Shown here: one piece after another, positions 48,511 through 63,697 of the stretch
How the letters are laid out: every line of letters begins with the position of its first letter
Position numbering within the stretch: position 1 is the first letter of the stretch
Virus record (IMG/VR): IMGVR_UViG_3300027969_000039
Coordinates: 239,058-303,057 of that record
DNA length: 64,000 nucleotides
Reading direction: 5' to 3' (one strand)
Notes under the pieces: generated by a model
Database searches by the model: none
What the model saw: the letters and a program-made list of their open reading frames with translations, nothing else
Told to the model about the DNA's origin: nothing
Made by a program: the position numbers and the translations under genes

Positions 48511-48527
48511 CGCTGGGAACAATACTT

Positions 48528-49373
48528 ATGCGTGATTCGGAGAATAGACAATATACAAGTGAATGGCTACAACATGAACGCCCTCAACCCATGTACGATT
48601 CATCTATCAACAAACTATATGAATCAGTTTTCTACACCAATCCGGCATACAATGATGATATAGCTAATGAATTCAAAATAGAATTCATACATTTTCTTAA
48701 CAATCATTCACTCAGTAAATTATCAGGTATTGATATGTTCCCTCATACTGATATATGTGTGGGGTGTACCCAATTTATTGATGATATCTATCAGCGTGTA
48801 GGTACCAATGATGTTATGATATTTGAAAATGATTACAAATATCACTGGAGATTGAACAATGACATTGAATATGTTACATTAGATACGCTTGTTCCAAATA
48901 AAGAATTGATAATCTCTATGCCTTTCCCTGCACACGGAGATGTGCATCCATTAATGCATACTATATTAGACCGTTGCGAACAACTAGATATACCCGTGCA
49001 TTTAGACGGTGCATGGATAACTTGTAGTAGAGATATAACATTCAACTTTGATCACCCTGCTATCAAAACTTTTGCTGTAAGTCTAAGCAAAGGTGGAATG
49101 GGCAATGATAGAATAGGTGTACGATTTTCACGCACTAGACCATGTGGAGCGATAACCATAATGAATGACTTTAATATGAATTGCAAAAGCCTGTTACATA
49201 CTGGATTGAAGTTTATGCAAGAGTTAGGTTCTGAATATTTCTGGAAAAAATATGAGACTAGATACTATAAAGTATGTGAAGATTTCAATCTAATACCCAC
49301 TAAATCTATACATGTAGCTAAAACAATGCAAGGAAAAATCGTAGGTATCAGACCTTTGTTGAGATGTTTATAA
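48528..49373 (+). CDS. PLP-dependent enzyme-like protein (fold type I)
   Basis: VHLDGAW and FAVSLSKG (candidate Schiff-base Lys), R.G.R. Confidence 0.65.
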   Translation: MRDSENRQYTSEWLQHERPQPMYDSSINKLYESVFYTNPAYNDDIANEFKIEFIHFLNNHSLSKLSGIDMFPHTDICVGCTQFIDDIYQRVGTNDVMIFENDYKYHWRLNNDIEYVTLDTLVPNKELIISMPFPAHGDVHPLMHTILDRCEQLDIPVHLDGAWITCSRDITFNFDHPAIKTFAVSLSKGGMGNDRIGVRFSRTRPCGAITIMNDFNMNCKSLLHTGLKFMQELGSEYFWKKYETRYYKVCEDFNLIPTKSIHVAKTMQGKIVGIRPLLRCL

Positions 49374-50687: not shown

Positions 50688-50690
50688 AAT

Positions 50691-52016: not shown

Positions 52017-52935
52017 AATTAGGAGACCATTTCTCAACTAAAGCATCTTGCTTACAATGACATTCATGTTTATATGTGCAAGTTATGGGTTCTGTTGGTA
52101 AAGTATATCCAGAATAAACATTGCCTATTTTTCCACCTACTCTTGGCCAGCATCTAGATATATCACCATTTGGATCAATTACAAAACGGTCTATTCCTGC
52201 ATTGCATTTCCAATCTGTAAAAATGTTTTTTTGATTCACTACTAAACTGTTCCAATTTGCTTGAACTCCGTTTAAAAAAATATTCTTTGGATATAAATCT
52301 AACCATGTTGGAAAACTAATAATAGAAGTTTTTTTAGGATATGATCGAATGTACTCTAATTGACTTTCAGTATATGGATATAACTCATCGCATATTAAAC
52401 TTTTTCTTACGGGTTTAATATCAATTAATATATCTAATTTTTCAAATTCCTTAATAGCAGTTAACCCTTTTTCCCAATAATCAGGCGTTATCAATAATGA
52501 AACCATTGGGAAACATTTATCTTTCATTATTTTAACAACCTGTACCAAATGCTCAGTGTCCACTTCTTTTGAGTGCCATGAAAACAAAAACATTGAATTG
52601 CTAGACTTAAACTGTTCCCAATATCTGAGAGTCCTAGATCCATTGGTGTTTATTTCAATCACAAGATTTTCATGTGAAACGCTATCCATAAATGCTTGTA
52701 ATTGCGGCCATTGTGTGGGTTCCCCACCTATTATCTCTAAACACACATGTGAGTTTTTTTGTCGTACTTTGTTAATAAAGTTAGCTACAGCTATATAATT
52801 TATATTCCATCTTTCAGAACCATCATTACTATTTGGGTGACAATAATCACATGTATAATTACACACATTATGTGGTTTAAACGATATCATTGCTATGTTT
52901 TTTGGACCAGAATTAGTTAAGTGAATAGGTATCAT
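52009..52935 (-). CDS. Radical SAM protein with C-terminal SPASM/twitch region
   Basis: CNYTCDYC, GGEPT, TNGSR, WKCNAG...RC...IGN...C....C.C..D. Confidence 0.9.
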   Translation of the reverse strand: MIPIHLTNSGPKNIAMISFKPHNVCNYTCDYCHPNSNDGSERWNINYIAVANFINKVRQKNSHVCLEIIGGEPTQWPQLQAFMDSVSHENLVIEINTNGSRTLRYWEQFKSSNSMFLFSWHSKEVDTEHLVQVVKIMKDKCFPMVSLLITPDYWEKGLTAIKEFEKLDILIDIKPVRKSLICDELYPYTESQLEYIRSYPKKTSIISFPTWLDLYPKNIFLNGVQANWNSLVVNQKNIFTDWKCNAGIDRFVIDPNGDISRCWPRVGGKIGNVYSGYTLPTEPITCTYKHECHCKQDALVEKWSPNYV

Positions 52936-54320
52936 TTAAATATATCTTTCATTTCTGGAAAAGTGTCATAAAAATTAGTACCGCGATATCTATCAACCTT
53001 CTCGAGGTAGTCTTTAGTTTCTGGTAATCTCACGCTCCAATCATCGCTTTTCATAAAGCTAATCATACCGCGCAGTCTATCAATACCATAAGACGCAACT
53101 TTCCAATCTTCTTTGGTTACTTTACCTTTGTGCCATGATGGAATACCTAACTCCCAATTTTCTTCCCACCACGGTATGAATTCTTCATACTTGCGTTCGC
53201 ACTCATCTTTGAACCATTTAGGCAATATCTTCACGTTCAAAAATGCAGGCCAATAGACAAAGTGATAGTTGATGCCACCCGCACCGAATGGCCACATATT
53301 TATTTTCTTGAAGTTCTGCTCTAACTTCCATTTTACAAAGTCTGGAATGTAATAAATGTTCAATGCGTTGACTGCACATGCAACAGTTATCTCTACATTG
53401 TCGCTAGTCTGTGTATCTAGTATATGAAATACTTCTTCTGTACGACTCCATTTGCTTGGATAACGTATGTAATCGTTCATCTCATGTATACTGTCTACAC
53501 TATAGTGAAAACGAACAATCTTGAAATGTTTCCATAATTCAAATAAATCTTCACGCCATTCTACTCCGTTACTGTTATAGCGTATCTCCATATCTTTAGC
53601 ATATCCTTGACGGATGCATTCTTCTAAGATATCATAGTGTTCTTCAATGATGAGACTCTCGCCACCTGCAAAATACAATTGCTTCATGTTTGGAATCTGT
53701 TCATAGAACTGTTTCCAAAATACTGGATTATTCTTGTGCCAATTATAGCTGCTTCCGTTTGTACTTCCTTTATTATCCCATTGCCATATCTCTTTTACAT
53801 TCTTATTTTCAATGGTAGGATAGATATTTTGCCATTCTTTAATCCAACCTGAACTGTCATGCGGGCTGCACATGATGCAAGCCAACTGACATTTAGTTCC
53901 AAATCTTAAATCAATATATGCTAATTGAGGTGGTACTTCGCCGTCACTTGTTGTCTCAGCTAATAACTTATCTAAGTCAACTCTTTCTTTCCAATACTTA
54001 GTTTCCCACATGCGTTTGCTGTTATGTCCTGCTCGTTCCTCTTCATAACACTTGCGACAGCTTGGTGGTTCTTCACCGTTCAACATCTGCTTACGCACGT
54101 TCCTCATGTAAGTACTATTCCAACTAGAGACAAAATCACTCACGTTCAGATTATTAGGACGACCTTCTTCATCTTTTAATATGCCTACATTACCACCACC
54201 AATTTTGTCATTAGTGATGCCTACACTACTAGCGTTGGCAGTACAGCATACACGCATCTGCCCATCTGGACGAGTGCTGAGATGTACCCAAGGTAAAATA
54301 CAGAATGTTTTAGAAGTCAT
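52932..54320 (-). CDS. Radical SAM protein with N-terminal twitch/SPASM domain
   Basis: CILPW..MRVCC, CRKC, DLRFGTKCQLACIMC, AGGE.L. Confidence 0.9.
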   Translation of the reverse strand: MTSKTFCILPWVHLSTRPDGQMRVCCTANASSVGITNDKIGGGNVGILKDEEGRPNNLNVSDFVSSWNSTYMRNVRKQMLNGEEPPSCRKCYEEERAGHNSKRMWETKYWKERVDLDKLLAETTSDGEVPPQLAYIDLRFGTKCQLACIMCSPHDSSGWIKEWQNIYPTIENKNVKEIWQWDNKGSTNGSSYNWHKNNPVFWKQFYEQIPNMKQLYFAGGESLIIEEHYDILEECIRQGYAKDMEIRYNSNGVEWREDLFELWKHFKIVRFHYSVDSIHEMNDYIRYPSKWSRTEEVFHILDTQTSDNVEITVACAVNALNIYYIPDFVKWKLEQNFKKINMWPFGAGGINYHFVYWPAFLNVKILPKWFKDECERKYEEFIPWWEENWELGIPSWHKGKVTKEDWKVASYGIDRLRGMISFMKSDDWSVRLPETKDYLEKVDRYRGTNFYDTFPEMKDIFK

Positions 54321-55503
54321 TTAATTTTATCAGTTCAGGGATAGTTTCCCAAGTGTTTTCATTTCTAAGTTTATCTATTTGTTTAGTTGTTTTGATGAAT
54401 AAATTTAAGTCTTTGAAATTAGAAGGTTTTGATAATTCTGCTAAAGTTTGTTTAAATTCTGAAATTATATTTGTTGAGTATTTATTGTCATATATATTTG
54501 CAAAAGATATAAGGTTATCGGTAATTGTTTTTTTAAATTCATCTGGAAGTACGCTTACGTTGTAATATGCAGGAGCTTCGATTAAATTAATATAAAAATT
54601 ATTCTTTTTAATTATCTTTGAATCAGTTAGATATGTAATAATATTAGGCAATCTACTAACATTTAATACTCCTACTGTTATTCCAATGCCAAATTTAATA
54701 AAATCAAAATTAGATAATTGTTTTAAATTAGATTCAACACTTTTCCATACTGTTCCGTAACGAACTAATTCAGCACGATCTCCAATCTCATCAATACTTG
54801 CCCATACACTTATCTTTTCAGAATTCCACTTGCGCCAATAATCTAGTATGTCTTTTTTTCCATATGTTAACGTAGAACAGTTTGTATTGTATCGTATACG
54901 TACATCAAATTTTTTATGTTCTACTAACATATCTAATATTTGCCAATGTTCAGGCATCAATAAAGGTTCTCCGCCTGCAAAATATATTTCTTCAACATTA
55001 TCAATTTGACTTTCTAAAAAATTAAAATCAATAGGAGTGTTTAATACTTTGTTTTGTTCAGATAACCATTTTAAATTAATTGCATCTTGTGTCCATGCGC
55101 TACTAAATGCAGGTCCGCAACTACGACATTTAAAATTACATAGATTGCTAAATCTAAAATCCCAATACTTCAAATGCATCGTAGAACAAGTTCCGTCAGA
55201 ATTTGTTATATTAGGTATATTTTTTAAAACATCTAAATAAGATTCATTGCGAGAATAACGATTACTTTTTCCGGTAACATCTTCTTTATCAAAACATGAA
55301 CTACATACAGTTGGACGAATGTTATTCATCATCTCACTTCGTAATTTCTTCATATTATCACTGTTCCATATTTCATTGATAGGTTGTGTATTAAGATCAC
55401 CGGCATGGTAATGCGGTTTAATCAAACAACACGGAACTACTTTACCATTTGGTTGAAAGTTTAAATGCACCCACGGAACAACACACAATGTTTTAGAAGT
55501 CAT
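54310..55503 (-). CDS. Radical SAM protein with N-terminal twitch/SPASM domain
   Basis: CVVPW..VPCC, CSSC, DFRFSNLCNFKCRSC, AGGEPL. Confidence 0.9.
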   Translation of the reverse strand: MTSKTLCVVPWVHLNFQPNGKVVPCCLIKPHYHAGDLNTQPINEIWNSDNMKKLRSEMMNNIRPTVCSSCFDKEDVTGKSNRYSRNESYLDVLKNIPNITNSDGTCSTMHLKYWDFRFSNLCNFKCRSCGPAFSSAWTQDAINLKWLSEQNKVLNTPIDFNFLESQIDNVEEIYFAGGEPLLMPEHWQILDMLVEHKKFDVRIRYNTNCSTLTYGKKDILDYWRKWNSEKISVWASIDEIGDRAELVRYGTVWKSVESNLKQLSNFDFIKFGIGITVGVLNVSRLPNIITYLTDSKIIKKNNFYINLIEAPAYYNVSVLPDEFKKTITDNLISFANIYDNKYSTNIISEFKQTLAELSKPSNFKDLNLFIKTTKQIDKLRNENTWETIPELIKLNDF

Positions 55504-55828
55504 TTTTTATTTCTTTAAATGAAATGTTTATACTATCATCTCTTACATCAGACTTATCTATGTTGTCATTTATTTTGTCACTACAAAATTTAGAACAAAC
55601 TGATTTTTCATTTTTCCAACTTTCTTCTATTTTTTTCATAGCTTGACTATTTTTCATTTCAGCTAAAGAATATTTTTTACCATCTAGCTGTTCATATAAA
55701 GGTCCTAAAAATTCTGTCACTTTATTAATATATGGTTCATTTGCTATCCAGCAACATGGAAAATAGAAGCCATGAGCAGAAATATAGTCTGATGTTAATC
55801 CTTTTTTACATCTAGGATAAATTAACAT
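55493..55828 (-). CDS. Stand-alone SPASM/twitch Fe-S domain
   Basis: PRC...ISAHG.YFPCCW...IEESW....VCSKFC; GAGG RBS. Confidence 0.7.
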   Translation of the reverse strand: MLIYPRCKKGLTSDYISAHGFYFPCCWIANEPYINKVTEFLGPLYEQLDGKKYSLAEMKNSQAMKKIEESWKNEKSVCSKFCSDKINDNIDKSDVRDDSINISFKEIKNDF

Positions 55829-56456
55829 AGCGCCTCTGTACTTCTTGCCAATCTATCGTTGGTGTTAATGGATCTTCACTTTCATATCTTACACTTTTTA
55901 CAATGCTAAATTCATGGAATCCTAATTTTCTTGCTAAGTATATACCTTCGTCAATATTGTATTGATTATACTTAAATAAAATCCATTTCCAAATTATTTT
56001 AATATTAGGATTATATTCTACTAAAGTCTTAATACCGTTTTCAATAGTTTCCCACTTGCTATTAACTCTATATAAATGATTGTTGTTTGGTAATCCATCT
56101 ATTGAAAATACAATGTTGTCACGATGGTCAAGTATGCTTGCTGTTTCTTTCCACCAATCGATACTTCTAAATGCACCATTAGTATGCATACCTATACTCA
56201 TGTGGGGATGTGCTGTTCGTATACTAGATATTAATTCGTGAAATTTAGGGTGATATATAGGATCACCGTGATTGCCACACATGACAAACTTCTTTTTTCC
56301 CTCAGCTAATTTTACGGTAGTGTCAATATCACAATCTTCTAATTTAATATTATCAATTGACAATGTTCGCGGGCAATGCGGACATGCTAACGTACACCTA
56401 CTAGTAGGTTCTATGTGTAGTACTCTGTCATCTATCCAAATATCTTCATTATTCAT
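55812..56456 (-). CDS. Radical SAM core domain (lacks auxiliary domain)
   Basis: HIEPTSRCTLACPHCPR, CGNHGDPI, HTNG, FSIDG, YR. Confidence 0.88.
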   Translation of the reverse strand: MNNEDIWIDDRVLHIEPTSRCTLACPHCPRTLSIDNIKLEDCDIDTTVKLAEGKKKFVMCGNHGDPIYHPKFHELISSIRTAHPHMSIGMHTNGAFRSIDWWKETASILDHRDNIVFSIDGLPNNNHLYRVNSKWETIENGIKTLVEYNPNIKIIWKWILFKYNQYNIDEGIYLARKLGFHEFSIVKSVRYESEDPLTPTIDWQEVQRRYVNLS

Positions 56457-56461
56457 GCTAT

Positions 56462-57730
56462 TTAAATAACAAATTCATCTAACCATGGAAATAAAGGTTT
56501 CCAATTTAAATTTCTTCTTCTATCTATATCATCTAGTTGAATTTTTAGTTCTTTTACTAATTCAGGGCAATAAGGTTGATTATTAATAGTATCACGATAT
56601 CCACTAAGTTTTTCTTTGAGATATTCAGATGGTGCAACTGCAATCATCCTGTCAAAATCTTCATCAAAAAACCCATTAGGAAATATATCGGCTCGCAAAT
56701 AAGTCATATAGTCAGCAAAACTAAAAGAAATTTCAATTAGCGAAAGATCATTTGTTGTTCTGATATTGTTATAATAATTAATTTTTTCAATTAATTCTGG
56801 ATATGTTTTTATAGTTAAGTTGCACATAGTAGAATGTACTACTAATTTTATTTTAGGGTATTCTGCTATTAACGTTTTAAAATTTTCTTCCCATTGAATT
56901 AAATCTAAACCATGTCTAACATATTCTTCTTGTGGTCCCCATGCATCAATGCTACAAAATATTCTAAAAGATTTTATATGATTTTTAGTAACTAAATTTT
57001 CTACTTTATCTAATATTTTTCTAAATTTAGTATTTGATACTTTTAAATTTGAAAAAATACTAAAAATTAATTCAGGGCATGGATTTGTTTCAAAAAATTC
57101 TATATTTTGTTCAAACTCAGGTTGAAAAAATGGCTCACCACCTAACAAATTATATTCTCTTATAGACAATGCATTTTTTTCCAACCAAGCCCAATATTTT
57201 TTTACTAATATGGGATAGTCTTTTTTTCTGTCAATATGTTTATCTAACTCTTTTTGTGATTTTAAATTAAATTTAATATCTTCATTTTCCCATACCGTGC
57301 TATATTCTGAATTGCAATAAAGGCAAGCCATGTTACATAAATTATTGAAATATACTTCAACAATAGTTGGCGATACTTTAATAGCTTTATTATTATTTAA
57401 CAATTCAACAGCAGGTTTTACATAGTGTTTGCTAGTAGGATGCACGTTTAAATTTACACTCATCCTATCACTAATGCCACCACTCTTTTCAATTTTTTCG
57501 CAATATTCACATCCTTTGCCGGGCCAACGGCCATCTAACATATCTTTCCTGGTACTTAATTTTAAAGGAGTATTGTGAAAATCTTCAATGTTTTCAACTG
57601 TTATTTCATCGGGGTTTACTCTATGACAACTGTTTGTTTTTTTAGCATATATATTTATTGAACTCCATGAAAATTTCCACACACAAGCCGGTTCCGGCAT
57701 TCCATATATATCTTTAAAATTATTTTTCAT
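56462..57730 (-). CDS. Radical SAM protein with N-terminal twitch domain
   Basis: C.WK..WS...SCHRV, CEYC, EVYFNNLCNMACLYC, GGEPF; ATGA overlap places the start at 57730. Confidence 0.9.
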   Translation of the reverse strand: MKNNFKDIYGMPEPACVWKFSWSSINIYAKKTNSCHRVNPDEITVENIEDFHNTPLKLSTRKDMLDGRWPGKGCEYCEKIEKSGGISDRMSVNLNVHPTSKHYVKPAVELLNNNKAIKVSPTIVEVYFNNLCNMACLYCNSEYSTVWENEDIKFNLKSQKELDKHIDRKKDYPILVKKYWAWLEKNALSIREYNLLGGEPFFQPEFEQNIEFFETNPCPELIFSIFSNLKVSNTKFRKILDKVENLVTKNHIKSFRIFCSIDAWGPQEEYVRHGLDLIQWEENFKTLIAEYPKIKLVVHSTMCNLTIKTYPELIEKINYYNNIRTTNDLSLIEISFSFADYMTYLRADIFPNGFFDEDFDRMIAVAPSEYLKEKLSGYRDTINNQPYCPELVKELKIQLDDIDRRRNLNWKPLFPWLDEFVI

Positions 57731-58395
57731 ATGAGTCTTCCAAATCCCCATTTTCTTTCATGGCACCACCAGCAAGTTTCACAATGTGGTGTTGACCAAT
57801 CATAAGTCTTAGCTTCGCAACTTTTAGTGATTGGAAATAATGTATCCATCAAGTTAAAATGATTATATAATTCTGCTATTCCTTTTTTATCTAAATTAGC
57901 AAAAGGTCTATAACATCTAGGTCCCGGCATAACTGATTTTATTTCTTCTGTGCGGTCTCTCCTAAAATCTCTCTCGTCTATCACAGCTTCATTAAATGAA
58001 TTGCACACTTCAGGTGGTGGATTGCAATTAATACCAGTGACATGGCAATCAATAATTTCATTTTTATACGCTCCTTCAGTCAGTATATCTTGTGCATCTT
58101 GTAATTCGGGTCCTTCCATTACAGGATCACAATGTAAATGTTCACTAAATTTGATATCAAATTCTTTCTCACAAAATTCTATTACTCTTTTACTAAAAAT
58201 AAATTGATAAGGTTTTAAAATATTGACCGCAGTTATAGGATGTATACTGATTTCTGGTCTTTCAGTTACTTTATACTTCGATAGTATATAGCAGATCATG
58301 GCGCTATCTGCGCCGCCTGAGATTTTAATTCCCACTTTATTGAATTGTGGATCTATAGTAAAATCTATATCCTGTTGAGAATTTTTGATAAACAT
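57727..58395 (-). CDS. QueC-like PP-loop protein (second copy)
   Basis: SGGADS, NPP, RPF.NLDK, TKSC...HC..CWWC.ER.WGF. Confidence 0.75.
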   Translation of the reverse strand: MFIKNSQQDIDFTIDPQFNKVGIKISGGADSAMICYILSKYKVTERPEISIHPITAVNILKPYQFIFSKRVIEFCEKEFDIKFSEHLHCDPVMEGPELQDAQDILTEGAYKNEIIDCHVTGINCNPPPEVCNSFNEAVIDERDFRRDRTEEIKSVMPGPRCYRPFANLDKKGIAELYNHFNLMDTLFPITKSCEAKTYDWSTPHCETCWWCHERKWGFGRLI

Positions 58396-58397
58396 GA

Positions 58398-59483
58398 TTA
58401 CTTAAATTGTTCTGTGAATACATCAAACTCTGTGCCGCATTTTTGTGAACACACTTCTAATTTCCCTGCTGCTACACTAGATAATTTCCAACTTGATTCT
58501 ATTTTTGAAAATAATTTACTATTGTCAATAACATCACTCAAATCGTTGTTGATAACATCGATGCCTTTTTTACCGCCTGTATTATCAATTATGTGCCAAA
58601 TTTGTTCTATTCTGTAATCTTCATGCCACCATTTATACATTCTACCTGCTGTCCAGCAGCAAGGCATAAGCAGTCCTTCGGCAGTGATAAAAATATTACC
58701 TTCTTTAACAACCTTACAATCTATTTTACAACTGTCATAGTATTTAGTCATGCTCCCGTGTTGAGCAATTAATTCTTGTTCTTTGGATAAAACACGATTT
58801 TGAAATTCTTCTTTAGGTTTTTTAAGCAATATAGTTTCCGTGCCTTTCCGATTTTGTGCTTGATGTTCTTCTTTTCCTTGATTTCTTGCAGTGCTAAAAA
58901 ATCTAGCAGTTTTCTTTTTAGTAAATTTTTCACATCCCCACTCATTTGCTAACTTTTCGGCTTCTTCCACTTGATGTTGATTGTGTTCAAATATGATATA
59001 ATCCCATCTTGCTCTGCCACCTGCATTGATAAAACTACGCATACTGTTTTCTACTATACTCCATTTAACATTTTGGCGATATAGATGATTAGTATCTACT
59101 AACCCATCCACAGAGAATATTACAGCACCTTTGTTGTTGTATATCTTGGCTAATTCTGTCCACCAATCAGTATCTCTAGCCCCTGCGTTAGTATTCATAC
59201 TGAGCCACATGTTTGCATTATGTTCTCTAAAATATCGAAATACTTCTAGTGTATCTCTAGCAACTATTGGATCACCTAAATTACCGCACATGTACATTGT
59301 GTCTAGCTGACTAATAAATTTTGTGGAGAATATCTTTTTGCAATCATCTAAAGATAGTTCAGCATTGGTGATGTGTTTATTATCTTTGCCACCGTTCTCG
59401 TTGCGGTCACACATTGGACATGCTGCTTGACATAACTGTGTTATCTCTAAATGAACTTTCTTTATATCTTTTGATTTATACAT
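58398..59483 (-). CDS. Radical SAM protein with C-terminal twitch domain
   Basis: HLEITQLCQAACPMC, CGNLGDP, FSVDG, C...FITAEG..PCCW...C...C. Confidence 0.9.
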   Translation of the reverse strand: MYKSKDIKKVHLEITQLCQAACPMCDRNENGGKDNKHITNAELSLDDCKKIFSTKFISQLDTMYMCGNLGDPIVARDTLEVFRYFREHNANMWLSMNTNAGARDTDWWTELAKIYNNKGAVIFSVDGLVDTNHLYRQNVKWSIVENSMRSFINAGGRARWDYIIFEHNQHQVEEAEKLANEWGCEKFTKKKTARFFSTARNQGKEEHQAQNRKGTETILLKKPKEEFQNRVLSKEQELIAQHGSMTKYYDSCKIDCKVVKEGNIFITAEGLLMPCCWTAGRMYKWWHEDYRIEQIWHIIDNTGGKKGIDVINNDLSDVIDNSKLFSKIESSWKLSSVAAGKLEVCSQKCGTEFDVFTEQFK

Positions 59484-60175
59484 TATTTTATGCCGATACG
59501 CATATATCGTGTGTACTTATCAAGCGCCAATTCACCTTCATATAGCATAGTAGACATTGGAGATTGTATTCTAAATTCTTCTAAGCTATTAGAACAATTT
59601 ATATGATCTTCAATCTCAACGTAGTTATTGGTTTGAAGTATAACTATCTTATTATTAGGTATGTTATTGTACCAAACATCAAAATTATGTATATGTTCAC
59701 AGCTAGTATTGATGATGGTGTTTGCAGAATCAGTTAATTCTAATTTACTTCTATCATATCTATGAGTTTCATATTTAAAATTTTCATAAATTAGATTATG
59801 TATATCTACTGTAGCTGCTTTAAATTGCCAATTATTTTTTACTTTTTCTCTGTTTATAGTTTCTGCTACTCGTTCACACAACGGATCAATGTCAAAGCTA
59901 CGAATTTTATCTATTATGCAACTACTCTCAAATAACATTGGTGCTAATGTAGCATACCAACCAGCACATAAAAATATGATACCTAAATCTAAGTTTAATT
60001 TTTCTAATTCAGATACTAACCATCGTTTACTTTTTAGTTGTCCCCAGCTTAACGCATCAGACAAGTCAGCACCCTCATTATCAACTGCATTGCATAATTG
60101 ACTAAACAATTTGTTTTGAGTTAAAACAAACATTCTTCCAAACGTATCTTTATCATCTGTCCAATTAATTGTCAT
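59483..60175 (-). CDS. SAM-dependent methyltransferase-like protein
   Basis: GQLKSK.WL, LCAGWYA, SFDIDP, INTSCEH, RYMRIG. Confidence 0.6.
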   Translation of the reverse strand: MTINWTDDKDTFGRMFVLTQNKLFSQLCNAVDNEGADLSDALSWGQLKSKRWLVSELEKLNLDLGIIFLCAGWYATLAPMLFESSCIIDKIRSFDIDPLCERVAETINREKVKNNWQFKAATVDIHNLIYENFKYETHRYDRSKLELTDSANTIINTSCEHIHNFDVWYNNIPNNKIVILQTNNYVEIEDHINCSNSLEEFRIQSPMSTMLYEGELALDKYTRYMRIGIK

Positions 60176-61751
60176 CAAATTTCTCCTTTAACCAATCAAA
60201 GTTATTAATCTTTGATAGTGCTAGTAAATGGCCTTTATTTAATGTTCCGTATGATCTGCCTTGAATTGCACCAGCAATCGCATATTTACCATATGGTCTA
60301 TCAGCACCCACTGTACACCATGTTTCCAATCTATTAAATGTTTCCTCATCGTTCTGTCTGTCAATGACTTTACTTGCTAGTTTGCAACATTCTCTAAATG
60401 CACTACGCCAAGCACTAAATGCGTCAGTATTGAAATTTGTTATGTTGCTAACTTCAAATACGGGCTTGTACTTAGTGCTGATACTGGTGGTCATGTCAGG
60501 CTTACTCAAGTCCATGTTGATTGTTAACTCTCTAGGGAATAACTTGATGCCACCAAATCCATACTCTAAGTCATTGACTGGATTCTTACTGCGCCAAACA
60601 TAAACCCAGTCCATCTTGTCTGGATGAACGATATAGTCAAAATTAAAATTCTTGTTTATTACGGCATCACCATCTACTATCCAAACCATCTTAGTGTTGG
60701 CTAACTTAGCAGCAGTAATATGTGCATTATGTATACCTTTAACACCGTCAACTCTTTTTGCTCTTGGGAATCTACGCTTAAGATTAGTCCAATTCTCCTC
60801 AGCATTAGGTTCATTGTATGTTACCATAATAATATCATATTCATACTCATTAATAGTATCAACTGAGTGTATCGTTTTGGGTTGTCTATCGGGGTTGAAT
60901 TCTAAAGTTTTAATGAATTTGCTTTGTTCACTAGTAAATGGTTCACATATTGGGATAATGCTACCTAAAGTTTTGCATTCGTTTACTGCATCTAACACTG
61001 ACATTTTTTCTACCGTAGATTTATACAAATCATTTAAATAATCAAAATCTCTTACTTGAGTAAAATCCCAATTTGTATATTGTGTTTTATAACATCCTTG
61101 TCTAGCACCTAATATAGCCCATATGCCATTATTAACCTCTATTCCAGTAGTCATCCAAATTTTTAGTCTATTTAAATTACCTATGTTTAAGTCTGCTAAT
61201 TCATCGACTTTAATTCCGTTATGCAAGCACATCTTTACCCCTTCACGGAATCCAGCACGCCATGCTTGCAACTGGCTAGTATTATTGTGTATTATAGAAT
61301 ATGACTTATCTATTGCCATATAATTTAATGCCCAACAAAAATCTACTTGAGTCATGGGATCATTTAGATCCGCTGCCTCATGTGTTTTCATATCAAGCAT
61401 TGCTTGTACAGGCCAACATTTGATTCCCCCGTTGCCGTACAATAAACCGTTGATGATATTCTTACTGGGCCAACTAAAGACTGTTTTACTGTCATCGATT
61501 GAATCATCTAACACTAGTGTCTGATGTAGATATTTGTGGTCAATAACCGCATCGCCGTCAATGACTGATACTCGTGGGGTAGTTGCTAATTTTGCAACCG
61601 CTTTGTGTGCAGCGTCACTACCTTTAACTCCATGAACCCTTTTGGCATAAGGAATTTTTGTTAACAAATCTTCCCAATTTGCTTGTGCATTTGGCTCATC
61701 ATAGCTAAGATAGACAACATCGTATTCGTAGATTTTAAATTCTTTACTCAT
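60165..61751 (-). CDS. Protein with two tandem GT-A glycosyltransferase-like domains
   Basis: Two copies of YD....Y.EPNA..NW..L...P.AKRV.GVKG...AH...A.......DGD ... N..N.L.YG.GGIK ... AWR..FRE..K. Confidence 0.65.
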   Translation of the reverse strand: MSKEFKIYEYDVVYLSYDEPNAQANWEDLLTKIPYAKRVHGVKGSDAAHKAVAKLATTPRVSVIDGDAVIDHKYLHQTLVLDDSIDDSKTVFSWPSKNIINGLLYGNGGIKCWPVQAMLDMKTHEAADLNDPMTQVDFCWALNYMAIDKSYSIIHNNTSQLQAWRAGFREGVKMCLHNGIKVDELADLNIGNLNRLKIWMTTGIEVNNGIWAILGARQGCYKTQYTNWDFTQVRDFDYLNDLYKSTVEKMSVLDAVNECKTLGSIIPICEPFTSEQSKFIKTLEFNPDRQPKTIHSVDTINEYEYDIIMVTYNEPNAEENWTNLKRRFPRAKRVDGVKGIHNAHITAAKLANTKMVWIVDGDAVINKNFNFDYIVHPDKMDWVYVWRSKNPVNDLEYGFGGIKLFPRELTINMDLSKPDMTTSISTKYKPVFEVSNITNFNTDAFSAWRSAFRECCKLASKVIDRQNDEETFNRLETWCTVGADRPYGKYAIAGAIQGRSYGTLNKGHLLALSKINNFDWLKEKFDDN

Positions 61752-61810
61752 ACGAATATTTAATATAAATAAAGGATGATGCGTAATTTGTGTTTTGGGT
61801 AAATTGAAGG

Positions 61811-61839
61811 TTGACTTCTATTCAGAACTACTATATAAT
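61811..61839 (+). promoter_or_regulatory. Sigma70-type promoter
   Basis: TTGACT(61811-16)-17 nt-TATAAT(61834-39). Confidence 0.75.
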
Positions 61840-61906
61840 ACACACATAAACGCAAAAAACACTATGTAATTTGCAGTTATTTTTAACCAGGACTAAATAG
61901 AATACT

Positions 61907-62041
61907 ATGATGAATAAAACTTGTTACATGCCGAAACATACGGGGCTATGGTCTATAGAGACCTTAGCGGCCTTTGCGGTATCATATCCTACAAGTATTC
62001 GCGGGAATGATAACCAAAGAGGAGCCCGGGGAGAGGAATAA
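61907..62041 (+). CDS. 44-aa putative leader peptide (not in ORF track)
   Basis: MMNKTCYMPKHTGLWSIETLAAFAVSYPTSIRGNDNQRGARGEE*; lies between promoter elements and a terminator; TAAATA 7 nt upstream of the ATG. Confidence 0.55.
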   Translation: MMNKTCYMPKHTGLWSIETLAAFAVSYPTSIRGNDNQRGARGEE

Positions 62042-62068
62042 CTAGTTACATCATAACAAAATTTATTC

Positions 62069-62103
62069 AACCCCTGGGAAACTAAAAAGTCTCAGGGGTT
62101 TTT
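62069..62103 (+). terminator. Intrinsic terminator / attenuator hairpin
   Basis: AACCCCTGGGA-10 nt loop-TCTCAGGGGTT (11 bp, one G-U) running into a T tract. Confidence 0.8.
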
Positions 62104-62128
62104 CGTTGTATAAAAACAACAAACAGAG

Positions 62129-62157
62129 TTTACAGTAAATGGATACTCTGATATACT
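62129..62157 (+). promoter_or_regulatory. Sigma70-type promoter with extended -10, upstream of the tRNA array
   Basis: TTTACA(62129-34)-17 nt-TATACT(62152-57), preceded by TG. Confidence 0.65.
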
Positions 62158-62204
62158 AAGGGTTAATTAAGAAGCAACTACAAAGTTGCGTAGTGGAGAG
62201 TTAG

Positions 62205-62399
62205 ATAGTGTGTATAGGTAACGAGGACCTAGTCTGCACTTAAAACATGGACGAACGGGCGGCCTAGAGGATGAAGTCTCTTTTGTGAGATGAAAAATTC
62301 TAGCGTATTGAAACATATTAAAACACGCCCCTAGTAGCAGTAGCGAATCAAGGGTGTAATGTTGAGTGTGTTTCAATACACACATTCGCAAGAGTGTGT
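62205..62399 (+). ncRNA. Candidate structured RNA(s) at the head of the tRNA array
   Basis: Several stems, including the 15-bp GTATTGAAACATATT/AGTGTGTTTCAATAC helix and a GCAA-tetraloop hairpin. Confidence 0.4.
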
Positions 62400-62411
62400 T
62401 AACAAACATGT

Positions 62412-62494: not shown

Positions 62495-62573
62495 TCCGTA
62501 GAATCCGAGCATGGTGCACGGACTTGACTGTTAATCAATGACTAGCTGGGATCATTACCCAGATACGGAGCCA
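62495..62573 (+). tRNA. tRNA-Asn(GTT)
   Basis: TTGA-CT GTT AA-TCAA; variant T-loop ATCATTA; GCCA end. Confidence 0.8.
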
Positions 62574-62579: not shown

Positions 62580-62653
62580 GCCCTTTTCGTATAACGGTAT
62601 TACGCCTGTTTTGTAATCAGGATACGGCAGTTCAATTCTGTCATGGGGCACCA
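62580..62653 (+). tRNA. tRNA-Thr(TGT)
   Basis: CCTGT-TT TGT AA-TCAGG; TTCAATT; ACCA. Confidence 0.8.
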
Positions 62654-62658: not shown

Positions 62659-62717
62659 AGGATAGCAACAGCAAATCAAAAAAACTTTCAACGTTTATGA
62701 AAAAAAATGCTATCCTG
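62659..62717 (+). ncRNA. Mini RNA: AGGATAG...CTATCCTG stem enclosing an anticodon-arm-sized hairpin
   Basis: 9-bp AGGATAGCA/TGCTATCCT stem, CAGCAA motif, TTTCA-ACGTTTA-TGAAA. Confidence 0.55.
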
Positions 62718-62807: not shown

Positions 62808-62882
62808 GCCTGGTTAGTTCAGCGGAAGAACGTCTGCCCGATTAGCGGAATGTCGTAGGTTCGACTCCTACACTAGGTACCA
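62808..62882 (+). tRNA. tRNA-Ile(GAT) with non-canonical loop (C33, U37)
   Basis: TCTGC-CC GAT TA-GCGGA; otherwise a complete cloverleaf with CCA. Confidence 0.75.
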
Positions 62883-62887: not shown

Positions 62888-62999
62888 AGGATAGGTTCAG
62901 CAAATAATTTAACTACTACTCTGTAAAAGTAAAGGAACGGTTCGACTCCGTAGCCGCAAGGTTTGGTGTAACGGTAGCACTATGTTAAAAACTATCCTG
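62888..62999 (+). ncRNA. Circularly permuted tRNA-mimic RNA (YrlA/Y-RNA-like) with Tyr(GTA) anticodon arm
   Basis: Inside an AGGATAG/CTATCCT stem the order is anticodon arm, T arm, GCAA-capped acceptor, D arm. Confidence 0.7.
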
Positions 63000-63008: not shown

Positions 63009-63083
63009 ATTCCGTGAGGCAGCTGGCGTGGCCGATAGTCCTTCAAACTATTGAGATGGGATCAAAACCCATACGGAATACCA
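63009..63083 (+). tRNA. tRNA with loop CCTTCAA: Glu(TTC) with C33, or TCA opal-suppressor register
   Basis: ATTCCGT/ACGGAAT acceptor; ATAGT/ACTAT anticodon stem; T-loop ATCAAAA; ACCA. Confidence 0.65.
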
Positions 63084-63089
63084 ATCAAT

Positions 63090-63166
63090 GCGACCGTAAC
63101 TCAGCTGGATAGAGTACTAGGCTACGAACTTAGGAGTCGGGAGTTCGAATCTCTCCGGTCGCACCA
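63090..63166 (+). tRNA. tRNA-Arg(ACG)
   Basis: CTAGG-CT ACG AA-CTTAG; canonical. Confidence 0.93.
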
Positions 63167-63170
63167 ATTT

Positions 63171-63244
63171 GCTCTTTTAGTATAAAGGTATTATAATACA
63201 TTGGTAATGTATAGACGCTGGATCGTTACCAGCAAGGAGCACCA
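63171..63244 (+). tRNA. tRNA-Thr(GGT)
   Basis: ATACA-TT GGT AA-TGTAT; T-loop ATCGTTA; ACCA. Confidence 0.85.
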
Positions 63245-63338
63245 TATAAGAACACACTGCTTGCCTGACTGCAAAAGTCGTGGTAAACTACAAGAGAAAG
63301 GGGTTCAAATCCCCGGGACTGGTAGTGTGTTTCTATAT
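63245..63338 (+). ncRNA. Long-stem RNA carrying a T-arm-like hairpin
   Basis: TATAAGAACACACTGC/GTAGTGTGTTTCTATA stem enclosing GACT-GCAAA-AGTC, GTGGTAAAC and GGGG-TTCAAAT-CCCC. Confidence 0.5.
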
Positions 63339-63414
63339 GGTAATATAGCATAGTGGCTAATGCAACTGCTTCATACGCAGTCTATCGTTGGTTCGAGTCC
63401 AACTATTACCACCA
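63339..63414 (+). tRNA. tRNA-Met or Ile2 (CAT)
   Basis: ACTGC-TT CAT AC-GCAGT; ACCA; G1-C72 pair, so not an initiator. Confidence 0.88.
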
Positions 63415-63423
63415 AACAATTTT

Positions 63424-63579: not shown

Positions 63580-63588
63580 AGTTTTTAT

Positions 63589-63697
63589 GGGTTGTCAAGG
63601 TTGGTCTCATGCACGGTGAATAGCCGTAGGAGCATTATCGAGTGTGCGCCACCGCACTCTTGGTCTGACAAGGGTTCAAGTCCCTTACAATCCACCA
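63589..63697 (+). ncRNA. 109-nt tmRNA-like / D-armless alanine-identity RNA
   Basis: GGGTTGT/ACAATCC-A-CCA with G3-U70; GAC-AAGGG-TTCAAGT-CCCTT; interior of non-tRNA hairpins. Confidence 0.6.

What the first reader, a model, noticed from the sequence alone, without database searches (positions are those of the whole stretch)
62888..62999. Circularly permuted tRNA mimic that keeps an anticodon arm (YrlA/Y-RNA-like)
Seen: within a terminal helix AGGATAG/CTATCCT and a second helix TTTAAC/GTTAAA, the order is anticodon arm TACT-CT GTA AA-AGTA (Tyr), variable AAGGA, T arm ACGG-TTCGACT-CCGT, acceptor AGCC-GCAA-GGTT closed by a GNRA loop, then D arm GTGT-AACGGTA-GCAC. There is no CCA end, so it cannot be charged as transcribed. 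Established: bacterial and phage YrlA Y RNAs place the T arm before a loop-closed acceptor and D arm and bind Ro60/TROVE through a terminal stem; they are not known to me to display a full anticodon loop. Inference: a non-chargeable decoy or guide for anticodon nucleases or RNA-repair proteins.
Basis: partly seen in the sequence, partly recalled or inferred. Interest (0 to 1): 0.85.

Follow-up and report, generated by a model that had tools for sequence, protein, structure and literature searches.

The report
Phage Y-RNA-like permuted tRNA mimic
A large uncultured phage encodes, inside its tRNA gene array, a 112-base RNA shaped like a tRNA that cannot be charged; its conserved end-to-end "handle" links it to a phage Ro60-like RNA-repair protein, making it one member of a large, uncatalogued family of Y-RNA-like tRNA and anticodon mimics.

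Summary
It is a tRNA cloverleaf with an anticodon arm (7-nt loop CUGUAAA), a 5-nt variable loop, a T arm and a D arm. Its acceptor is only 4 bp capped by GCAA. Its ends lie between the D and anticodon arms and are closed by a 7-bp terminal helix.

Fourteen variants in uncultured phage contigs keep every base pair (322/322 cells) and show compensatory changes.

The terminal helix plus a following CAGCAA(A)U forms a portable "handle". It occurs on more than 360 distinct RNAs in phage tRNA arrays, on the tRNA strand in all 80 copies checked. These RNAs carry lone anticodon-like hairpins, acceptor-less or full permuted tRNAs, and the handle is even inserted into chargeable tRNAs.

The same handle lies directly upstream of a ~470-aa phage protein (DUF2828/DUF7788) in 131 of 144 loci. 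That protein's predicted fold matches Ro60/TROVE structures, and phosphoesterase, phosphatase and kinase genes follow it.

The element is therefore best read as a Y-RNA analogue of a divergent phage Ro60 system. It is not a YrlA member: there is no Rfam hit and no GNCGAA motif. Binding, expression and a decoy or repair role are inferred. No Ro-like gene was found in this window.

The parts
62888..62894 (+). Handle helix H, 5' strand (AGGAUAG)
   Evidence: Pairs with 62992-62998. Across the family about 25 stem variants covary (AGGATCG/CGATCCT, AGGATGC/GCATCCT, AGAATGT/ACATTCT and others). There are 364 unique open-handle RNAs against 13-20 with control anchors.
62895..62905 (+). Variable triplet (GUU) followed by the conserved single-stranded motif CAGCAAAU
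   Evidence: The motif is invariant in 14 of 14 B-type variants. It defines the family.
62908..62913 (+). Second helix h2, 5' strand (UUUAAC), pairing with 62984-62989
   Evidence: 4-6 bp in every B-type variant, but A/U-rich and with a shifting register. One compensatory change is seen. Support is weak.
62917..62931 (+). Anticodon-arm mimic UACU-CUGUAAA-AGUA, displaying the triplet GUA at 62923-62925
   Evidence: 4-bp stem with an A-U to U-A compensatory change in 6 of 14 variants. The 7-nt loop has U at position 2 and A at position 6 in all variants. Loops are CUUGAAA x11, CUGUAAA x2 and CUGAAAA x1.
62932..62936 (+). 5-nt variable loop (AAGGA)
   Evidence: Length is fixed at 5 nt in all 14 variants, as AAGGA or AGGGA.
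62937..62951 (+). T arm ACGG-UUCGACU-CCGU
   Evidence: Canonical T loop. The closing pair changes A-U to G-C on both sides in 4 of 14 variants.
62952..62963 (+). Truncated acceptor: 4-bp stem AGCC/GGUU capped by the GNRA tetraloop GCAA. There is no discriminator, no CCA and no free end
   Evidence: Present in 14 of 14 variants, with loop GCAA or GAAA and an A-U to G-U change in one.
62964..62980 (+). UG (tRNA positions 8-9) and D arm GUGU-AACGGUA-GCAC, with A14, G18, G19 and A21 equivalents
   Evidence: Invariant in 14 of 14 variants. The same D arm occurs in handle-bearing chargeable tRNAs of related contigs.
62984..62989 (+). Second helix h2, 3' strand (GUUAAA)
62992..62999 (+). Handle helix H, 3' strand (CUAUCCU) plus the conserved unpaired G, followed by a U-rich spacer
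   Evidence: The trailing G is conserved: it was required by the detection rule for open handles and is also the first loop base in the closed forms.
62659..62717 (+). Paralogous short handle RNA ('element A'): the same helix and the CAGCAAAU motif enclosing one hairpin UUUCA-ACGUUUA-UGAAA
   Evidence: Exact motif match. It folds with z = -3.74. Identical or near-identical copies occur in related contigs.
62808..62882 (+). Upstream neighbour tRNA-Ile(GAU) with encoded CCA, ending 5 nt before the element
   Evidence: ARAGORN and Rfam. In 53 of the 80 family copies the upstream same-strand tRNA ends no more than 10 nt before the element.
63009..63083 (+). Downstream neighbour tRNA-Glu(UUC), with a non-canonical T loop, starting 9 nt after the element
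   Evidence: Found by ARAGORN only at a relaxed threshold.
61811..61839 (+). Best sigma-70-like promoter match upstream of the array (TTGACT-17-TATAAT). A second match lies at 62129-62157
   Evidence: Consensus scan, 11 of 12 and 10 of 12 matches. This is a pattern match only. No promoter or terminator was found around the element itself.

Best explanation
The element is a gene for a stable, non-chargeable RNA of about 112 nt, co-transcribed with the phage tRNA array.

Its 5' and 3' ends pair into a conserved 7-bp helix followed by single-stranded CAGCAAAU. I infer that this 'handle' is the docking site for a phage Ro60-like (TROVE+vWA) ring protein of the DUF2828/DUF7788 family, in the way the terminal stem of a Y RNA docks Ro60.

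The rest of the RNA is a complete tRNA body. It has the D/T-loop elbow and an anticodon arm showing GUA. The acceptor is sealed by a GNRA tetraloop and the chain is opened between the D and anticodon arms. The particle therefore presents a tRNA look-alike that cannot enter translation.

I propose that it works as the tRNA-shaped module of a Ro-like ribonucleoprotein in the phage's tRNA-damage response. It would act either as bait or a competitive substrate for host anticodon-loop nucleases, or as an adaptor bringing the Ro-like ring and the adjacent end-healing enzymes (kinase and phosphatases) to tRNA-binding factors or broken tRNAs.

Shown: the anatomy, family membership, covariation, array context, the genomic link between handle RNAs and the Ro-like gene, and the Ro60 fold of that protein.
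Inferred: RNA-protein binding, processing, and the decoy or repair role.
For: Anatomy and conservation:
- 14 variants, 322 of 322 cells paired, and two pairs with compensatory changes.
- The element is as conserved as, or more conserved than, neighbouring tRNAs between the same contigs: 87-94% for the element against 77-92% for the other aligned tRNA-array segments of the same contigs.

Family and context:
- 80 of 80 copies lie on the tRNA strand (1276 same-strand tRNAs against 0 opposite). They usually sit 4-6 nt after one tRNA and 8-11 nt before the next.
- The handle helix covaries.

Link to a Ro60-like protein:
- The most widespread neighbouring ORF has Pfam DUF2828 + DUF7788 + weak VWA.
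- The AlphaFold model (pLDDT 75.7, pTM 0.71) has Ro60/TROVE entries as all eight best PDB matches, aligned over the full length. These include Thermus phage phiLo Ro60 (E 2e-9), D. radiodurans Rsr, and Xenopus and human Ro60.
- In 131 of 144 such genes a handle RNA lies within 400 nt upstream on the same strand, mostly 0-50 nt before the gene start. None lies downstream. Handles number 356 on the gene strand against 1 on the other.
- Handle-positive loci carry the gene in 24 of 89 cases, against 0 of 41 chance loci (p = 5e-5).

Repair context:
- On the same strand downstream are a Metallophos phosphoesterase (88 of 158 loci), a DSP-type phosphatase (86 of 158) and an AAA_33 P-loop kinase (48 of 158).

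Anticodon mimicry across the family:
- Of 173 short handle RNAs, 71 have a 7-nt loop with U at position 2 and a purine at position 6, against 4 expected.

Precedent:
- Y RNAs are encoded next to Ro60 and contain tRNA-like domains (PMC4201824).
- Phage phiLo Ro60 binds two RNAs encoded just upstream of its gene (PMC12135203).
- A bacterial Ro60/Y-RNA/RtcB operon responds to damaged tRNAs (PMC7790460).
- Phage tRNAs neutralise a tRNA-cleaving defence (PMC11464382).
Against: - No Ro60-like gene lies in the 64-kb window (tblastn).
- The window's 211-kb contig was not among the 80 best loci in three protein-seeded scans. Only related contigs, 81-84% identical over the array region, are shown to carry the gene.
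- The handle has no resemblance to the GNCGAA or GGUCCGA Ro-binding motifs.
- The protein's relation to Ro60 is seen only at fold level (TM about 0.5). phmmer and profile searches against PDB are not significant.
- There are no expression, RNA-end or binding data.
- The handle also occurs closed by a loop inside chargeable tRNAs, and it resembles an acceptor stem with a discriminator. It could therefore serve processing rather than protein binding.
- No RNA ligase gene was identified near the Ro-like gene.
Confidence: 0.55

Rival explanations
1. The handle is a processing and stability cassette. It mimics an acceptor stem (7 bp plus an unpaired G, with U-rich flanks), so that RNase P, RNase Z or exonucleases release and protect non-tRNA cargo from the polycistronic tRNA transcript. 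The Ro-like protein would then be unrelated to it, or only co-regulated.
For: The helix is 7 bp long, followed by a conserved G and a U-rich spacer, and sits in a tRNA-sized slot with tRNA-like spacing. Cargo is very diverse. M. smegmatis YrlA is cut by RNase P when its stem has 7 bp (PMC4201824).
Against: The same helix and motif occur closed by a small loop inside otherwise normal tRNAs, where no end needs to be made. They also occur in the leader of the Ro-like gene where no tRNAs are present (L008 and L044). The strictly conserved CAGCAA(A)U and the conserved AGGA/UCCU half of the helix point to sequence-specific recognition. There is no T-loop for RNase P or RNase Z in the short forms.
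Confidence: 0.12
2. The handle marks an RNA cleavage-and-ligation junction, a phage counterpart of the bulge-helix-bulge of archaeal and eukaryotic split, permuted and intron-containing tRNA genes. Closed handles would be introns removed from tRNAs. Open handles would be joined to give circular RNAs, so this element would become a circular, exonuclease-proof tRNA mimic.
For: Related contigs hold both interrupted tRNA genes and fully permuted tRNA genes that use the same module. In the interrupted genes the handle is inserted after nt 27 or 28, and the 5-bp anticodon stem is completed across the insertion in 9 of 9 parsed cases. The fully permuted genes have 7-bp acceptors joined by 4-17-nt loops. 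Kinase and phosphatase genes suited to end healing lie nearby.
Against: There is no bulge-helix-bulge geometry: the helix is a plain 7 bp flanked by an asymmetric loop (direct reading). No ligase or splicing endonuclease was found near the handle RNAs. For this element, ligation could never give a usable tRNA, because the acceptor is 4 bp and sealed. Most family members carry only a hairpin.
Confidence: 0.1
3. It is a permuted tRNA-Tyr gene that yields a working two-piece tRNA. The acceptor loop would be opened by RNase P, CCA added, and the two pieces held together by the handle helix. This would fill the gap left by the missing canonical tRNA-Tyr.
For: ARAGORN finds no tRNA-Tyr in 12 of 19 arrays with 25 or more tRNAs. 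Relatives with a GUA loop and a 7-8-bp acceptor closed by a 6-7-nt loop exist (L108). M. smegmatis YrlA is cut by RNase P and receives CCA in vivo (PMC4201824). Related contigs encode permuted (two-piece) tmRNA.
Against: In this element and all 13 other variants the acceptor is only 4 bp and closed by a GNRA tetraloop, with no discriminator. Chen et al. saw RNase P cleavage only with a 7-bp stem. Eleven of 14 orthologues show UGA rather than GUA, so no single amino-acid identity is conserved.
Confidence: 0.07
4. It is an ordinary YrlA-type Y RNA that a better model would annotate.
For: It shares the T arm - capped acceptor - D arm order of YrlA (PMC4201824). Weak YrlA scores (26-30 bits) fall on other permuted forms in related loci.
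Against: There is no RF02553 match on the element even at E<=10, against a gathering score of 69 bits. There is no GNCGAA motif. The ends emerge between the D and anticodon arms rather than from the anticodon stem. A full anticodon arm is present. The partner protein belongs to a different Pfam family from TROVE.
Confidence: 0.03
5. It is a decaying remnant of a rearranged tRNA gene with no function.
For: Phage tRNA arrays contain degenerate tRNAs. The fold is not more stable than shuffles.
Against: 14 variants keep all pairs and show compensatory changes. The GNRA loop and the tertiary-contact bases are invariant. Conservation equals or exceeds that of neighbouring tRNAs.
Confidence: 0.03

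Closest known systems
YrlA and other bacterial or phage Y RNAs (Rfam RF02553; Chen et al. 2014, PMC4201824)
   Same: A non-coding RNA whose ends pair in a terminal stem. A tRNA-like domain with the order T arm, loop-closed acceptor-like stem, D arm. Family members are encoded next to a Ro60-type protein gene. An RNA-repair gene context.
   Different: No covariance-model match. The conserved motif is CAGCAA(A)U after a 7-bp AGGAU helix, not GNCGAA in a bulged helix. The chain is opened between the D and anticodon arms, so a complete anticodon arm with a 7-nt loop is displayed. There are many copies per genome, embedded in tRNA arrays. The partner is a DUF2828/DUF7788 protein that resembles Ro60 only at fold level.
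Thermus phage phiLo Ro60 with Yrl1 and Yrl2 (PMC12135203; PDB 9KOP, 9L5Y)
   Same: A phage-encoded Ro60 homologue with its RNAs encoded directly upstream of the gene. It is the best structural match to the protein found here.
   Different: The phiLo RNAs carry the CGAA motif and are not described as tRNA-shaped. Here the RNAs carry a different handle and tRNA or anticodon cargo. The two proteins share only 17-18% identity.
D. radiodurans Yrn1 and M. smegmatis YrlA (PMC4201824)
   Same: Yrn1 can be drawn with a 5-bp 'anticodon arm'. M. smegmatis YrlA has a 7-bp acceptor that is cut by RNase P and receives CCA, as some full-acceptor relatives of this element might.
   Different: The Yrn1 loop has 6 nt. 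This element has a canonical 7-nt loop with U33- and R37-type bases. This element's acceptor is 4 bp and sealed.
Circularly permuted tRNA genes of Cyanidioschyzon merolae and other algae or archaea
   Same: The 3' half of the tRNA body is encoded before the 5' half. The termini pair in a helix. Relatives of this element have full 7-bp acceptors joined by a short intervening loop.
   Different: There is no bulge-helix-bulge. The setting is bacterial-virus. The acceptor here cannot be opened into a 7-bp stem. The junction lies at nt 26/27 rather than at intron-like sites processed by a splicing endonuclease.
Two-piece tmRNA from permuted ssrA genes (Rfam RF04321)
   Same: A permuted tRNA-like RNA made from one transcript. 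Related contigs encode one (L088, 120 bits).
   Different: tmRNA is charged and carries a reading frame. This element has neither.
Dictyostelid Class I RNAs (Rfam RF01414; PMC7919456)
   Same: This applies to the short paralogue, not to this element. Both are about 60 nt, with a short stem joining the ends, a conserved single-stranded motif containing CAGCAA next to the 5' strand, a variable hairpin region, and a 3' end reading ...CUGU. RF01414 is the only non-tRNA family that repeatedly matches short handle RNAs over its full length (21.6-25.5 bits).
   Different: Scores are well below the gathering score of 41.5. The host kingdom is different. Class I RNAs were reported to be absent outside Dictyostelia, and their known binder is an RRM protein. 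Most likely a chance or convergent resemblance.
Phage-encoded tRNAs that neutralise tRNA-cleaving defences, such as the T5 tRNA against PARIS (PMC11464382)
   Same: They are encoded in phage tRNA arrays and present anticodon loops of the kinds targeted by anticodon nucleases.
   Different: Those are functional, chargeable tRNAs that replace the cleaved ones. This RNA cannot be charged.

Membership tests
YrlA (Rfam RF02553) | Covariance-model score at or above the gathering score (69 bits) | tested here: not met
   No match on 62888-62999 even at E<=10. The only YrlA hit in the region is a spurious 20.8-bit match spanning two tRNAs.
YrlA (Rfam RF02553) | GNCGAAN0-1G motif near the 5' end, the likely Rsr contact (PMC4201824) | tested here: not met
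   The first 30 nt read AGGAUAG GUU CAGCAAAU AAUUUAAC. There is no GNCGAA.
YrlA (Rfam RF02553) | tRNA-like domain in the order T arm, closed acceptor-like stem-loop, D arm, with elbow-forming bases | tested here: met
   Direct reading. 14 variants with all pairs kept.
YrlA (Rfam RF02553) | Encoded next to a Ro60/TROVE gene | tested here: inconclusive
   None in this window. At family level the link is strong: 131 of 144 Ro-like genes are preceded by a handle RNA. B-type copies lie within about 10 kb of the gene in L059, L070 and L084.
Y RNA in the broad, functional sense (RNA partner of a Ro60-type ring) | The 5' and 3' ends form a conserved stem carrying a conserved sequence element | tested here: met
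   7-bp helix with covariation plus the invariant CAGCAA.
Y RNA in the broad, functional sense (RNA partner of a Ro60-type ring) | The partner protein has the Ro60 architecture (HEAT-repeat ring plus vWA) | tested here: met
   All eight best Foldseek PDB matches are Ro60/TROVE over the full length, E 2e-9 to 2e-5. Sequence-level searches are not significant.
Y RNA in the broad, functional sense (RNA partner of a Ro60-type ring) | Physical binding of the RNA to the protein | not testable with these tools
   Needs EMSA or RIP. Only genomic association is available.
tRNA (RF00005, ARAGORN) | 7-bp acceptor stem with free 5' and 3' ends, a discriminator and CCA (encoded or addable) | tested here: not met
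   4-bp stem sealed by GCAA and no ends there. No tRNA call.
tRNA (RF00005, ARAGORN) | D arm, anticodon arm with a 7-nt loop (U33, R37), 4-5-nt variable loop, T arm | tested here: met
   All are present, but the anticodon stem has 4 rather than 5 bp.
Permuted tRNA gene (Cyanidioschyzon type) | The 3' half lies upstream of the 5' half, joined at the acceptor by an intervening sequence that RNase P and tRNase Z can remove | tested here: not met
   The order is permuted, but the acceptor is 4 bp plus a tetraloop. Relatives with 7-8 bp and 4-17-nt loops do exist.
Permuted tRNA gene (Cyanidioschyzon type) | A bulge-helix-bulge motif formed by the leader and trailer | tested here: not met
   Plain 7-bp helix without 3-nt bulges separated by 4 bp (direct reading).
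Dictyostelid Class I RNA (RF01414) | Covariance-model score at or above 41.5 bits | tested here: not met
   21.6 bits on element A. 25.5 and 22.8 bits on two other short handle RNAs. No hit on the element under study.

The most novel reading that the evidence does not exclude
The handle is a portable tag for a virus-specific Ro60-like ring. Large phages graft it onto bare anticodon stem-loops, onto sealed tRNA mimics such as this one, onto permuted tRNAs, and even into the anticodon stem of chargeable tRNAs. This would create a multi-copy Ro-ribonucleoprotein system that baits, guards or repairs anticodon loops attacked by host nucleases. It would be a previously unrecognised arm of the phage-host conflict over tRNAs. 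It could also have distant look-alikes in the Class I RNAs of social amoebae.
Probability: 0.3. Interest if true: 0.9.

Novelty: new variant of a known kind. Interest (0 to 1): 0.75.

Why it matters
Y RNAs and their Ro60 partners are conserved from bacteria to humans, yet what the tRNA-like module of bacterial Y RNAs does is still open.

This work points to an RNA family with hundreds of members, absent from Rfam and from sequenced phage isolates. In it the same protein-linked handle carries cargo ranging from a bare anticodon hairpin to a whole tRNA. That is a natural deletion and permutation series showing which tRNA parts matter.

The displayed triplets are mainly UUU, UGA, UCU, UGU and GUA. 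To my knowledge these overlap the anticodons cut by known anticodon nucleases. The genes next to the Ro-like protein are RNA end-healing enzymes. Together these make a decoy or repair role directly testable with standard phage-defence assays.

The family also contains chargeable tRNAs with a roughly 45-nt domain inserted in the anticodon stem, and permuted tRNA genes in bacterial viruses. I know of no described precedent for either.

Tried and rejected
- **Rfam.** At gathering and permissive thresholds on the window and 14 related loci, nothing covers the element. YrlA gives only weak or spurious hits.
- **BLAST against GenBank phages.** Comparing the element, its paralogue and the whole array with 50,697 phage records gave only a 77-nt tRNA match to a Ralstonia jumbo phage and chance 21-mers. 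No cultured relative was found.
- **Thermodynamic stability as evidence.** Not significant.
- **Reading the terminal helix as something else.** I considered an intrinsic terminator, a kink-turn and a bulge-helix-bulge. All were rejected on direct reading: the cargo is too large, and there are no tandem G-A pairs and no bulges. The terminator scan also found nothing there.
- **Displayed triplet replacing a missing tRNA.** Results were mixed. The triplet was sometimes present and sometimes absent among canonical tRNAs. Only Tyr is often missing.
- **Search for the Ro-like, kinase and phosphatase genes in the window.** Absent.
- **Attempts to show the Ro-like gene on the window's own contig.** Three seeded scans did not list it. 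The stored locus ends where the window ends, so the downstream array could not be read.
- **Scan of bacterial and archaeal genomes for the handle.** This is uninformative about hosts.
- **Sequence-level link of the protein to Ro60.** Not significant. Only the fold comparison shows it.
- **Literature searches.** Searches for permuted phage tRNAs, anticodon decoys and DUF2828 found no description of this family.
Full report
**1. What is at the coordinates**

The window ends in a phage tRNA array on the + strand. The array holds 12 tRNAs by Rfam, 11 by default ARAGORN and 14 credible tRNAs at a relaxed ARAGORN threshold, and most encode their CCA. The rest of the window looks like a large phage:
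- ribonucleotide reductase;
- a PHROG-only 775-aa protein;
- two ORFs of 3009 and 2607 aa;
- a block of radical-SAM genes.

The window is identical to part of the 211,612-bp IMG/VR contig 3300027969_002424.

Between tRNA-Ile (ends 62882) and tRNA-Glu (starts 63009) lies the 112-nt element.
- a 7-bp terminal helix;
- a 6-bp A/U helix;
- a 4-bp hairpin with the 7-nt loop CUGUAAA;
- a 5-nt variable loop;
- a T arm with loop UUCGACU;
- a 4-bp stem capped by GCAA where the acceptor should be;
- UG, then a D arm with loop AACGGUA.

The tertiary-contact bases of a tRNA elbow are all present (U8, A14, G18, G19, A21, U54-U55-C56, A58 equivalents). It is a complete cloverleaf that has been sealed at the acceptor and opened between the D and anticodon arms.

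No tRNA or Rfam model calls it.

**2. It is conserved, with compensatory change**

Pattern scans of IMG/VR recovered 13 further distinct versions. Over the terminal helix and the anticodon, T, acceptor and D stems:
- all 322 sequence-by-pair cells form standard pairs (0 of 500 shuffles reach this; slid controls give 36-46%);
- one anticodon-stem pair switches A-U to U-A in 6 of 14 sequences;
- one T-stem pair switches A-U to G-C in 4 of 14 sequences;
- the cap stays GNRA (GCAA or GAAA).

The 6-bp second helix is only weakly supported: 4-6 A/U pairs with a shifting register. The displayed triplet is not fixed. It is UGA in 11 sequences, GUA in 2 (including the window) and GAA in 1. Between the same contigs the element is at least as conserved as the neighbouring tRNAs. 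This is not a decaying pseudogene.

**3. The terminal helix belongs to a portable 'handle'**

A 59-nt paralogue lies 229 nt upstream, at 62659-62717. It has the same helix, the same CAGCAAAU three bases after the 5' strand, and the same ...CCUG followed by U-rich sequence. It encloses a single hairpin.

Profile and rule-based searches of the fetched loci then showed the following.
- **The helix covaries.** About 25 stem variants occur, for example AGGATCG/CGATCCT, AGGATGC/GCATCCT and AGAATGT/ACATTCT. The outer AGGA/UCCU half is the most conserved.
- **The count is far above chance.** There are 364 distinct 'open-handle' RNAs in 2.1 Mb, against 13-20 with scrambled anchor words.
- **The context is always the tRNA array.** All 80 copies checked lie on the tRNA strand (1276 same-strand tRNAs against 0 opposite). 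Typically they sit 4-6 nt after one tRNA and 8-11 nt before the next.

**4. What the handle carries**

Most members are 50-65 nt and hold one hairpin. Of 173 distinct short members:
- 94 have a 7-nt loop (24 expected from shuffles);
- 71 have U at loop position 2 and a purine at position 6 (4 expected);
- the triplets shown are UUU (20), UGA (16), UCU (7), UGU (7), GUA (6), then CGA and GGA.

Longer members carry tRNA bodies in permuted order:
- the sealed 4-bp-acceptor type studied here;
- forms with no acceptor at all, in which the handle replaces the anticodon loop (the YrlA-like topology);
- forms with 5-8-bp acceptors closed by 4-17-nt loops, some with a full anticodon arm;
- forms opened in the variable region.

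The handle also occurs 'closed', capped by a small loop, as an insertion of about 45 nt in otherwise normal tRNA genes that have 7-bp acceptors and encoded CCA. It enters after nucleotide 27 or 28. In 9 of 9 parsed cases the one or two bases before the insertion complement the bases after the hairpin, completing a 5-bp anticodon stem. The Rfam tRNA model scores one such gene as a 117-nt tRNA.

The window's element is the exact circular permutation of that architecture.

**5. The protein link**

I clustered the ORFs around handle RNAs. The commonest neighbour is a protein of about 470 aa with Pfam DUF2828, DUF7788 and a weak VWA match.

A 16-sequence AlphaFold model (pLDDT 75.7, pTM 0.71) has a helical-repeat N-terminal part and an alpha/beta C-terminal domain. 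All eight of its best PDB matches are Ro60/TROVE proteins aligned over their full length:
- Thermus phage phiLo Ro60 (E 2e-9 and 1e-7);
- Deinococcus Rsr;
- Xenopus Ro60;
- human Ro60.

Lower matches cover only the vWA domain. Sequence-level searches do not see the relation. A language-model atlas places the family almost wholly in viruses.

Scans seeded with this protein returned hundreds of viral loci. The association with handle RNAs is strong.
- In 131 of 144 loci with enough upstream sequence, a handle RNA lies within 400 nt upstream on the same strand. Usually a 40-60-nt member ends just before the ribosome-binding site, often with a 90-175-nt member further up.
- None lies within 400 nt downstream.
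- Handles number 356 on the gene strand against 1 on the other.
- This holds even where no tRNA is near (L008 and L044).
- In the first scan, 24 of 89 handle-positive loci but 0 of 41 chance loci carry the gene (p = 5e-5).

Downstream on the same strand come a calcineurin-like phosphoesterase (88 of 158 loci), a dual-specificity-type phosphatase (86 of 158) and an AAA_33 P-loop kinase (48 of 158). This is the enzyme set used to heal broken RNA ends.

**6. Interpretation**

Two published precedents frame this.
- Bacterial and phage Y RNAs are encoded beside Ro60, pair their ends into a protein-binding stem, and carry a tRNA-like domain (PMC4201824).
- Phage phiLo Ro60 binds two RNAs encoded just upstream of its gene (PMC12135203).

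The handle family fits that pattern with a different stem motif and a divergent Ro60 lineage. I therefore read the element as a Y-RNA analogue. The handle docks the Ro-like ring. The sealed tRNA body with its anticodon arm is the effector module.

Three observations point to a likely role:
- the adjacent healing enzymes;
- the displayed triplets, which to my knowledge overlap those cut by PrrC, PARIS, colicin D and E5 and retron-linked nucleases;
- the known use of phage tRNAs against tRNA-cleaving defences (PMC11464382), together with the damaged-tRNA response of the Salmonella Ro60/Y-RNA/RtcB operon (PMC7790460).

The most likely role is bait for, or repair platform against, anticodon-loop attack. 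Binding, processing and this role are all inferences.

**7. Caveats specific to this window**

- No Ro-like, kinase or phosphatase homologue lies in the 64 kb.
- The window's contig did not appear among the 80 best loci of three seeded scans.
- Two related contigs do encode the protein: 3300027770_000072 and 3300027736_000034. They are 81-84% identical to the window across the array and its upstream spacer and carry an identical copy of the short paralogue.
- The part of the array beyond position 64000 could not be read.

**8. Rivals**

- The handle could be an acceptor-stem mimic that lets RNase P or RNase Z release cargo.
- It could be a cleavage-ligation junction, giving introns and permuted genes as in archaea and red algae.
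- This element could be a two-piece tRNA-Tyr.

Each explains some family members but fits this element poorly. Its acceptor is a conserved 4-bp GNRA hairpin. No bulge-helix-bulge or ligase was found. The displayed triplet varies among orthologues.

It is not a YrlA family member: there is no model hit and no GNCGAA motif, and the opening point differs.

**9. Novelty**

The kind of system is known: a Ro60-type protein with a tRNA-mimicking partner RNA. Several things appear undescribed:
- the handle motif;
- the DUF2828/DUF7788 partner;
- the multi-copy placement in tRNA arrays;
- the complete anticodon arm;
- the range of cargo, including tagged chargeable tRNAs.

Rfam 15 has no model for it, 50,697 GenBank phage records give no match, and literature searches found nothing.

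Noticed in passing
window 62659-62717 (+): A 59-nt paralogue of the element. It has the same terminal helix and CAGCAAAU motif around a single hairpin (loop ACGUUUA). It folds far better than shuffles (z = -3.74).
   Followed up: yes
L077:9750-9866, L024, L043, L023/L066/L090, L027, L070, L001, L060, L122/L108, L118 (related viral loci): Otherwise normal tRNA genes (7-bp acceptor, encoded CCA) carry the handle as a ~45-nt insertion after nt 27/28 of the anticodon stem. Orthologues differ in their loop: AUGUCAA (GUC) in L077 against the 8-nt loop ACUCUAAA, which contains CUA, in L024.
   Followed up: partly
L088:13823-13950; L024, L070, L017, L122 (117-120 nt forms); L108, L014, L416 and others (108-115 nt forms): Fully permuted tRNA genes in phage contigs. 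Some have 7-bp acceptors joined by 4-17-nt loops. Others have no acceptor, and the handle replaces the anticodon loop.
   Followed up: partly
Element A (window 62660-62717); L203:2946-2999; L140:4885-4939: Short handle RNAs are repeatedly matched end-to-end by the Dictyostelium Class I RNA model (21.6-25.5 bits, below the 41.5 cut-off). They share the layout of terminal stem, CAGCAA motif, variable hairpin and ...CUGU end. This is probably convergence, but it is unexplained.
   Followed up: partly
L088:8566-9274; L077:14398-14621: Related phage contigs encode a permuted (two-piece) tmRNA (Rfam RF04321, 120 and 57 bits). Weak betaproteobacterial tmRNA hits are a possible hint about the host.
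   Followed up: no
window 63250-63333 (+): An uncalled structured RNA in a tRNA-sized slot. It has a 12-bp terminal helix enclosing three hairpins, one T-arm-like (GGGG-UUCAAAU-CCCC). MFE is -32.6 kcal/mol. It has no Rfam or ARAGORN call, and the surrounding stretch 63054-63419 is conserved at about 84% in related contigs.
   Followed up: partly
window 63588-63697 (+): A 110-nt tRNA-like gene with a 7-bp acceptor, T arm and CCA, but about 35 extra bases including a long GC-rich hairpin. No tool calls it; there is only a 16.7-bit tmRNA hit. Its identity is unknown.
   Followed up: partly
window 62495-62573, 62580-62653, 63009-63083, 63171-63244 (+): Several array tRNAs (Asn, Thr, Glu, Thr) have non-canonical T loops of the form AUCNNNA. 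Three of them (Asn, Thr-UGU and Glu) are missed by default ARAGORN.
   Followed up: partly
window 46241-61751 (-): A block of at least seven radical-SAM paralogues, with a glycosyltransferase-like gene. Nearby lie TauD, Asp/Asn hydroxylase, fatty-acid desaturase and rubrerythrin genes (37.6-44 kb). This is an unusual oxidative or modification gene cluster for a phage.
   Followed up: no
window 5258-14287 and 16595-24418 (+); 24768-27604 (+): Two giant ORFs (3009 and 2607 aa). The first lies in a GC-richer segment (up to 50%, against about 33% elsewhere). They are followed by three tandem Gly_rich_2 paralogues.
   Followed up: no
window 61752-62411 (+): A 660-nt non-coding spacer before the first tRNA. 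It is 81% conserved in a related contig. It contains two strong sigma-70-like promoter matches (61811-61839 and 62129-62157) and, by eye, a GC-rich hairpin followed by a T run near 62071-62104. Rfam gives no match.
   Followed up: partly
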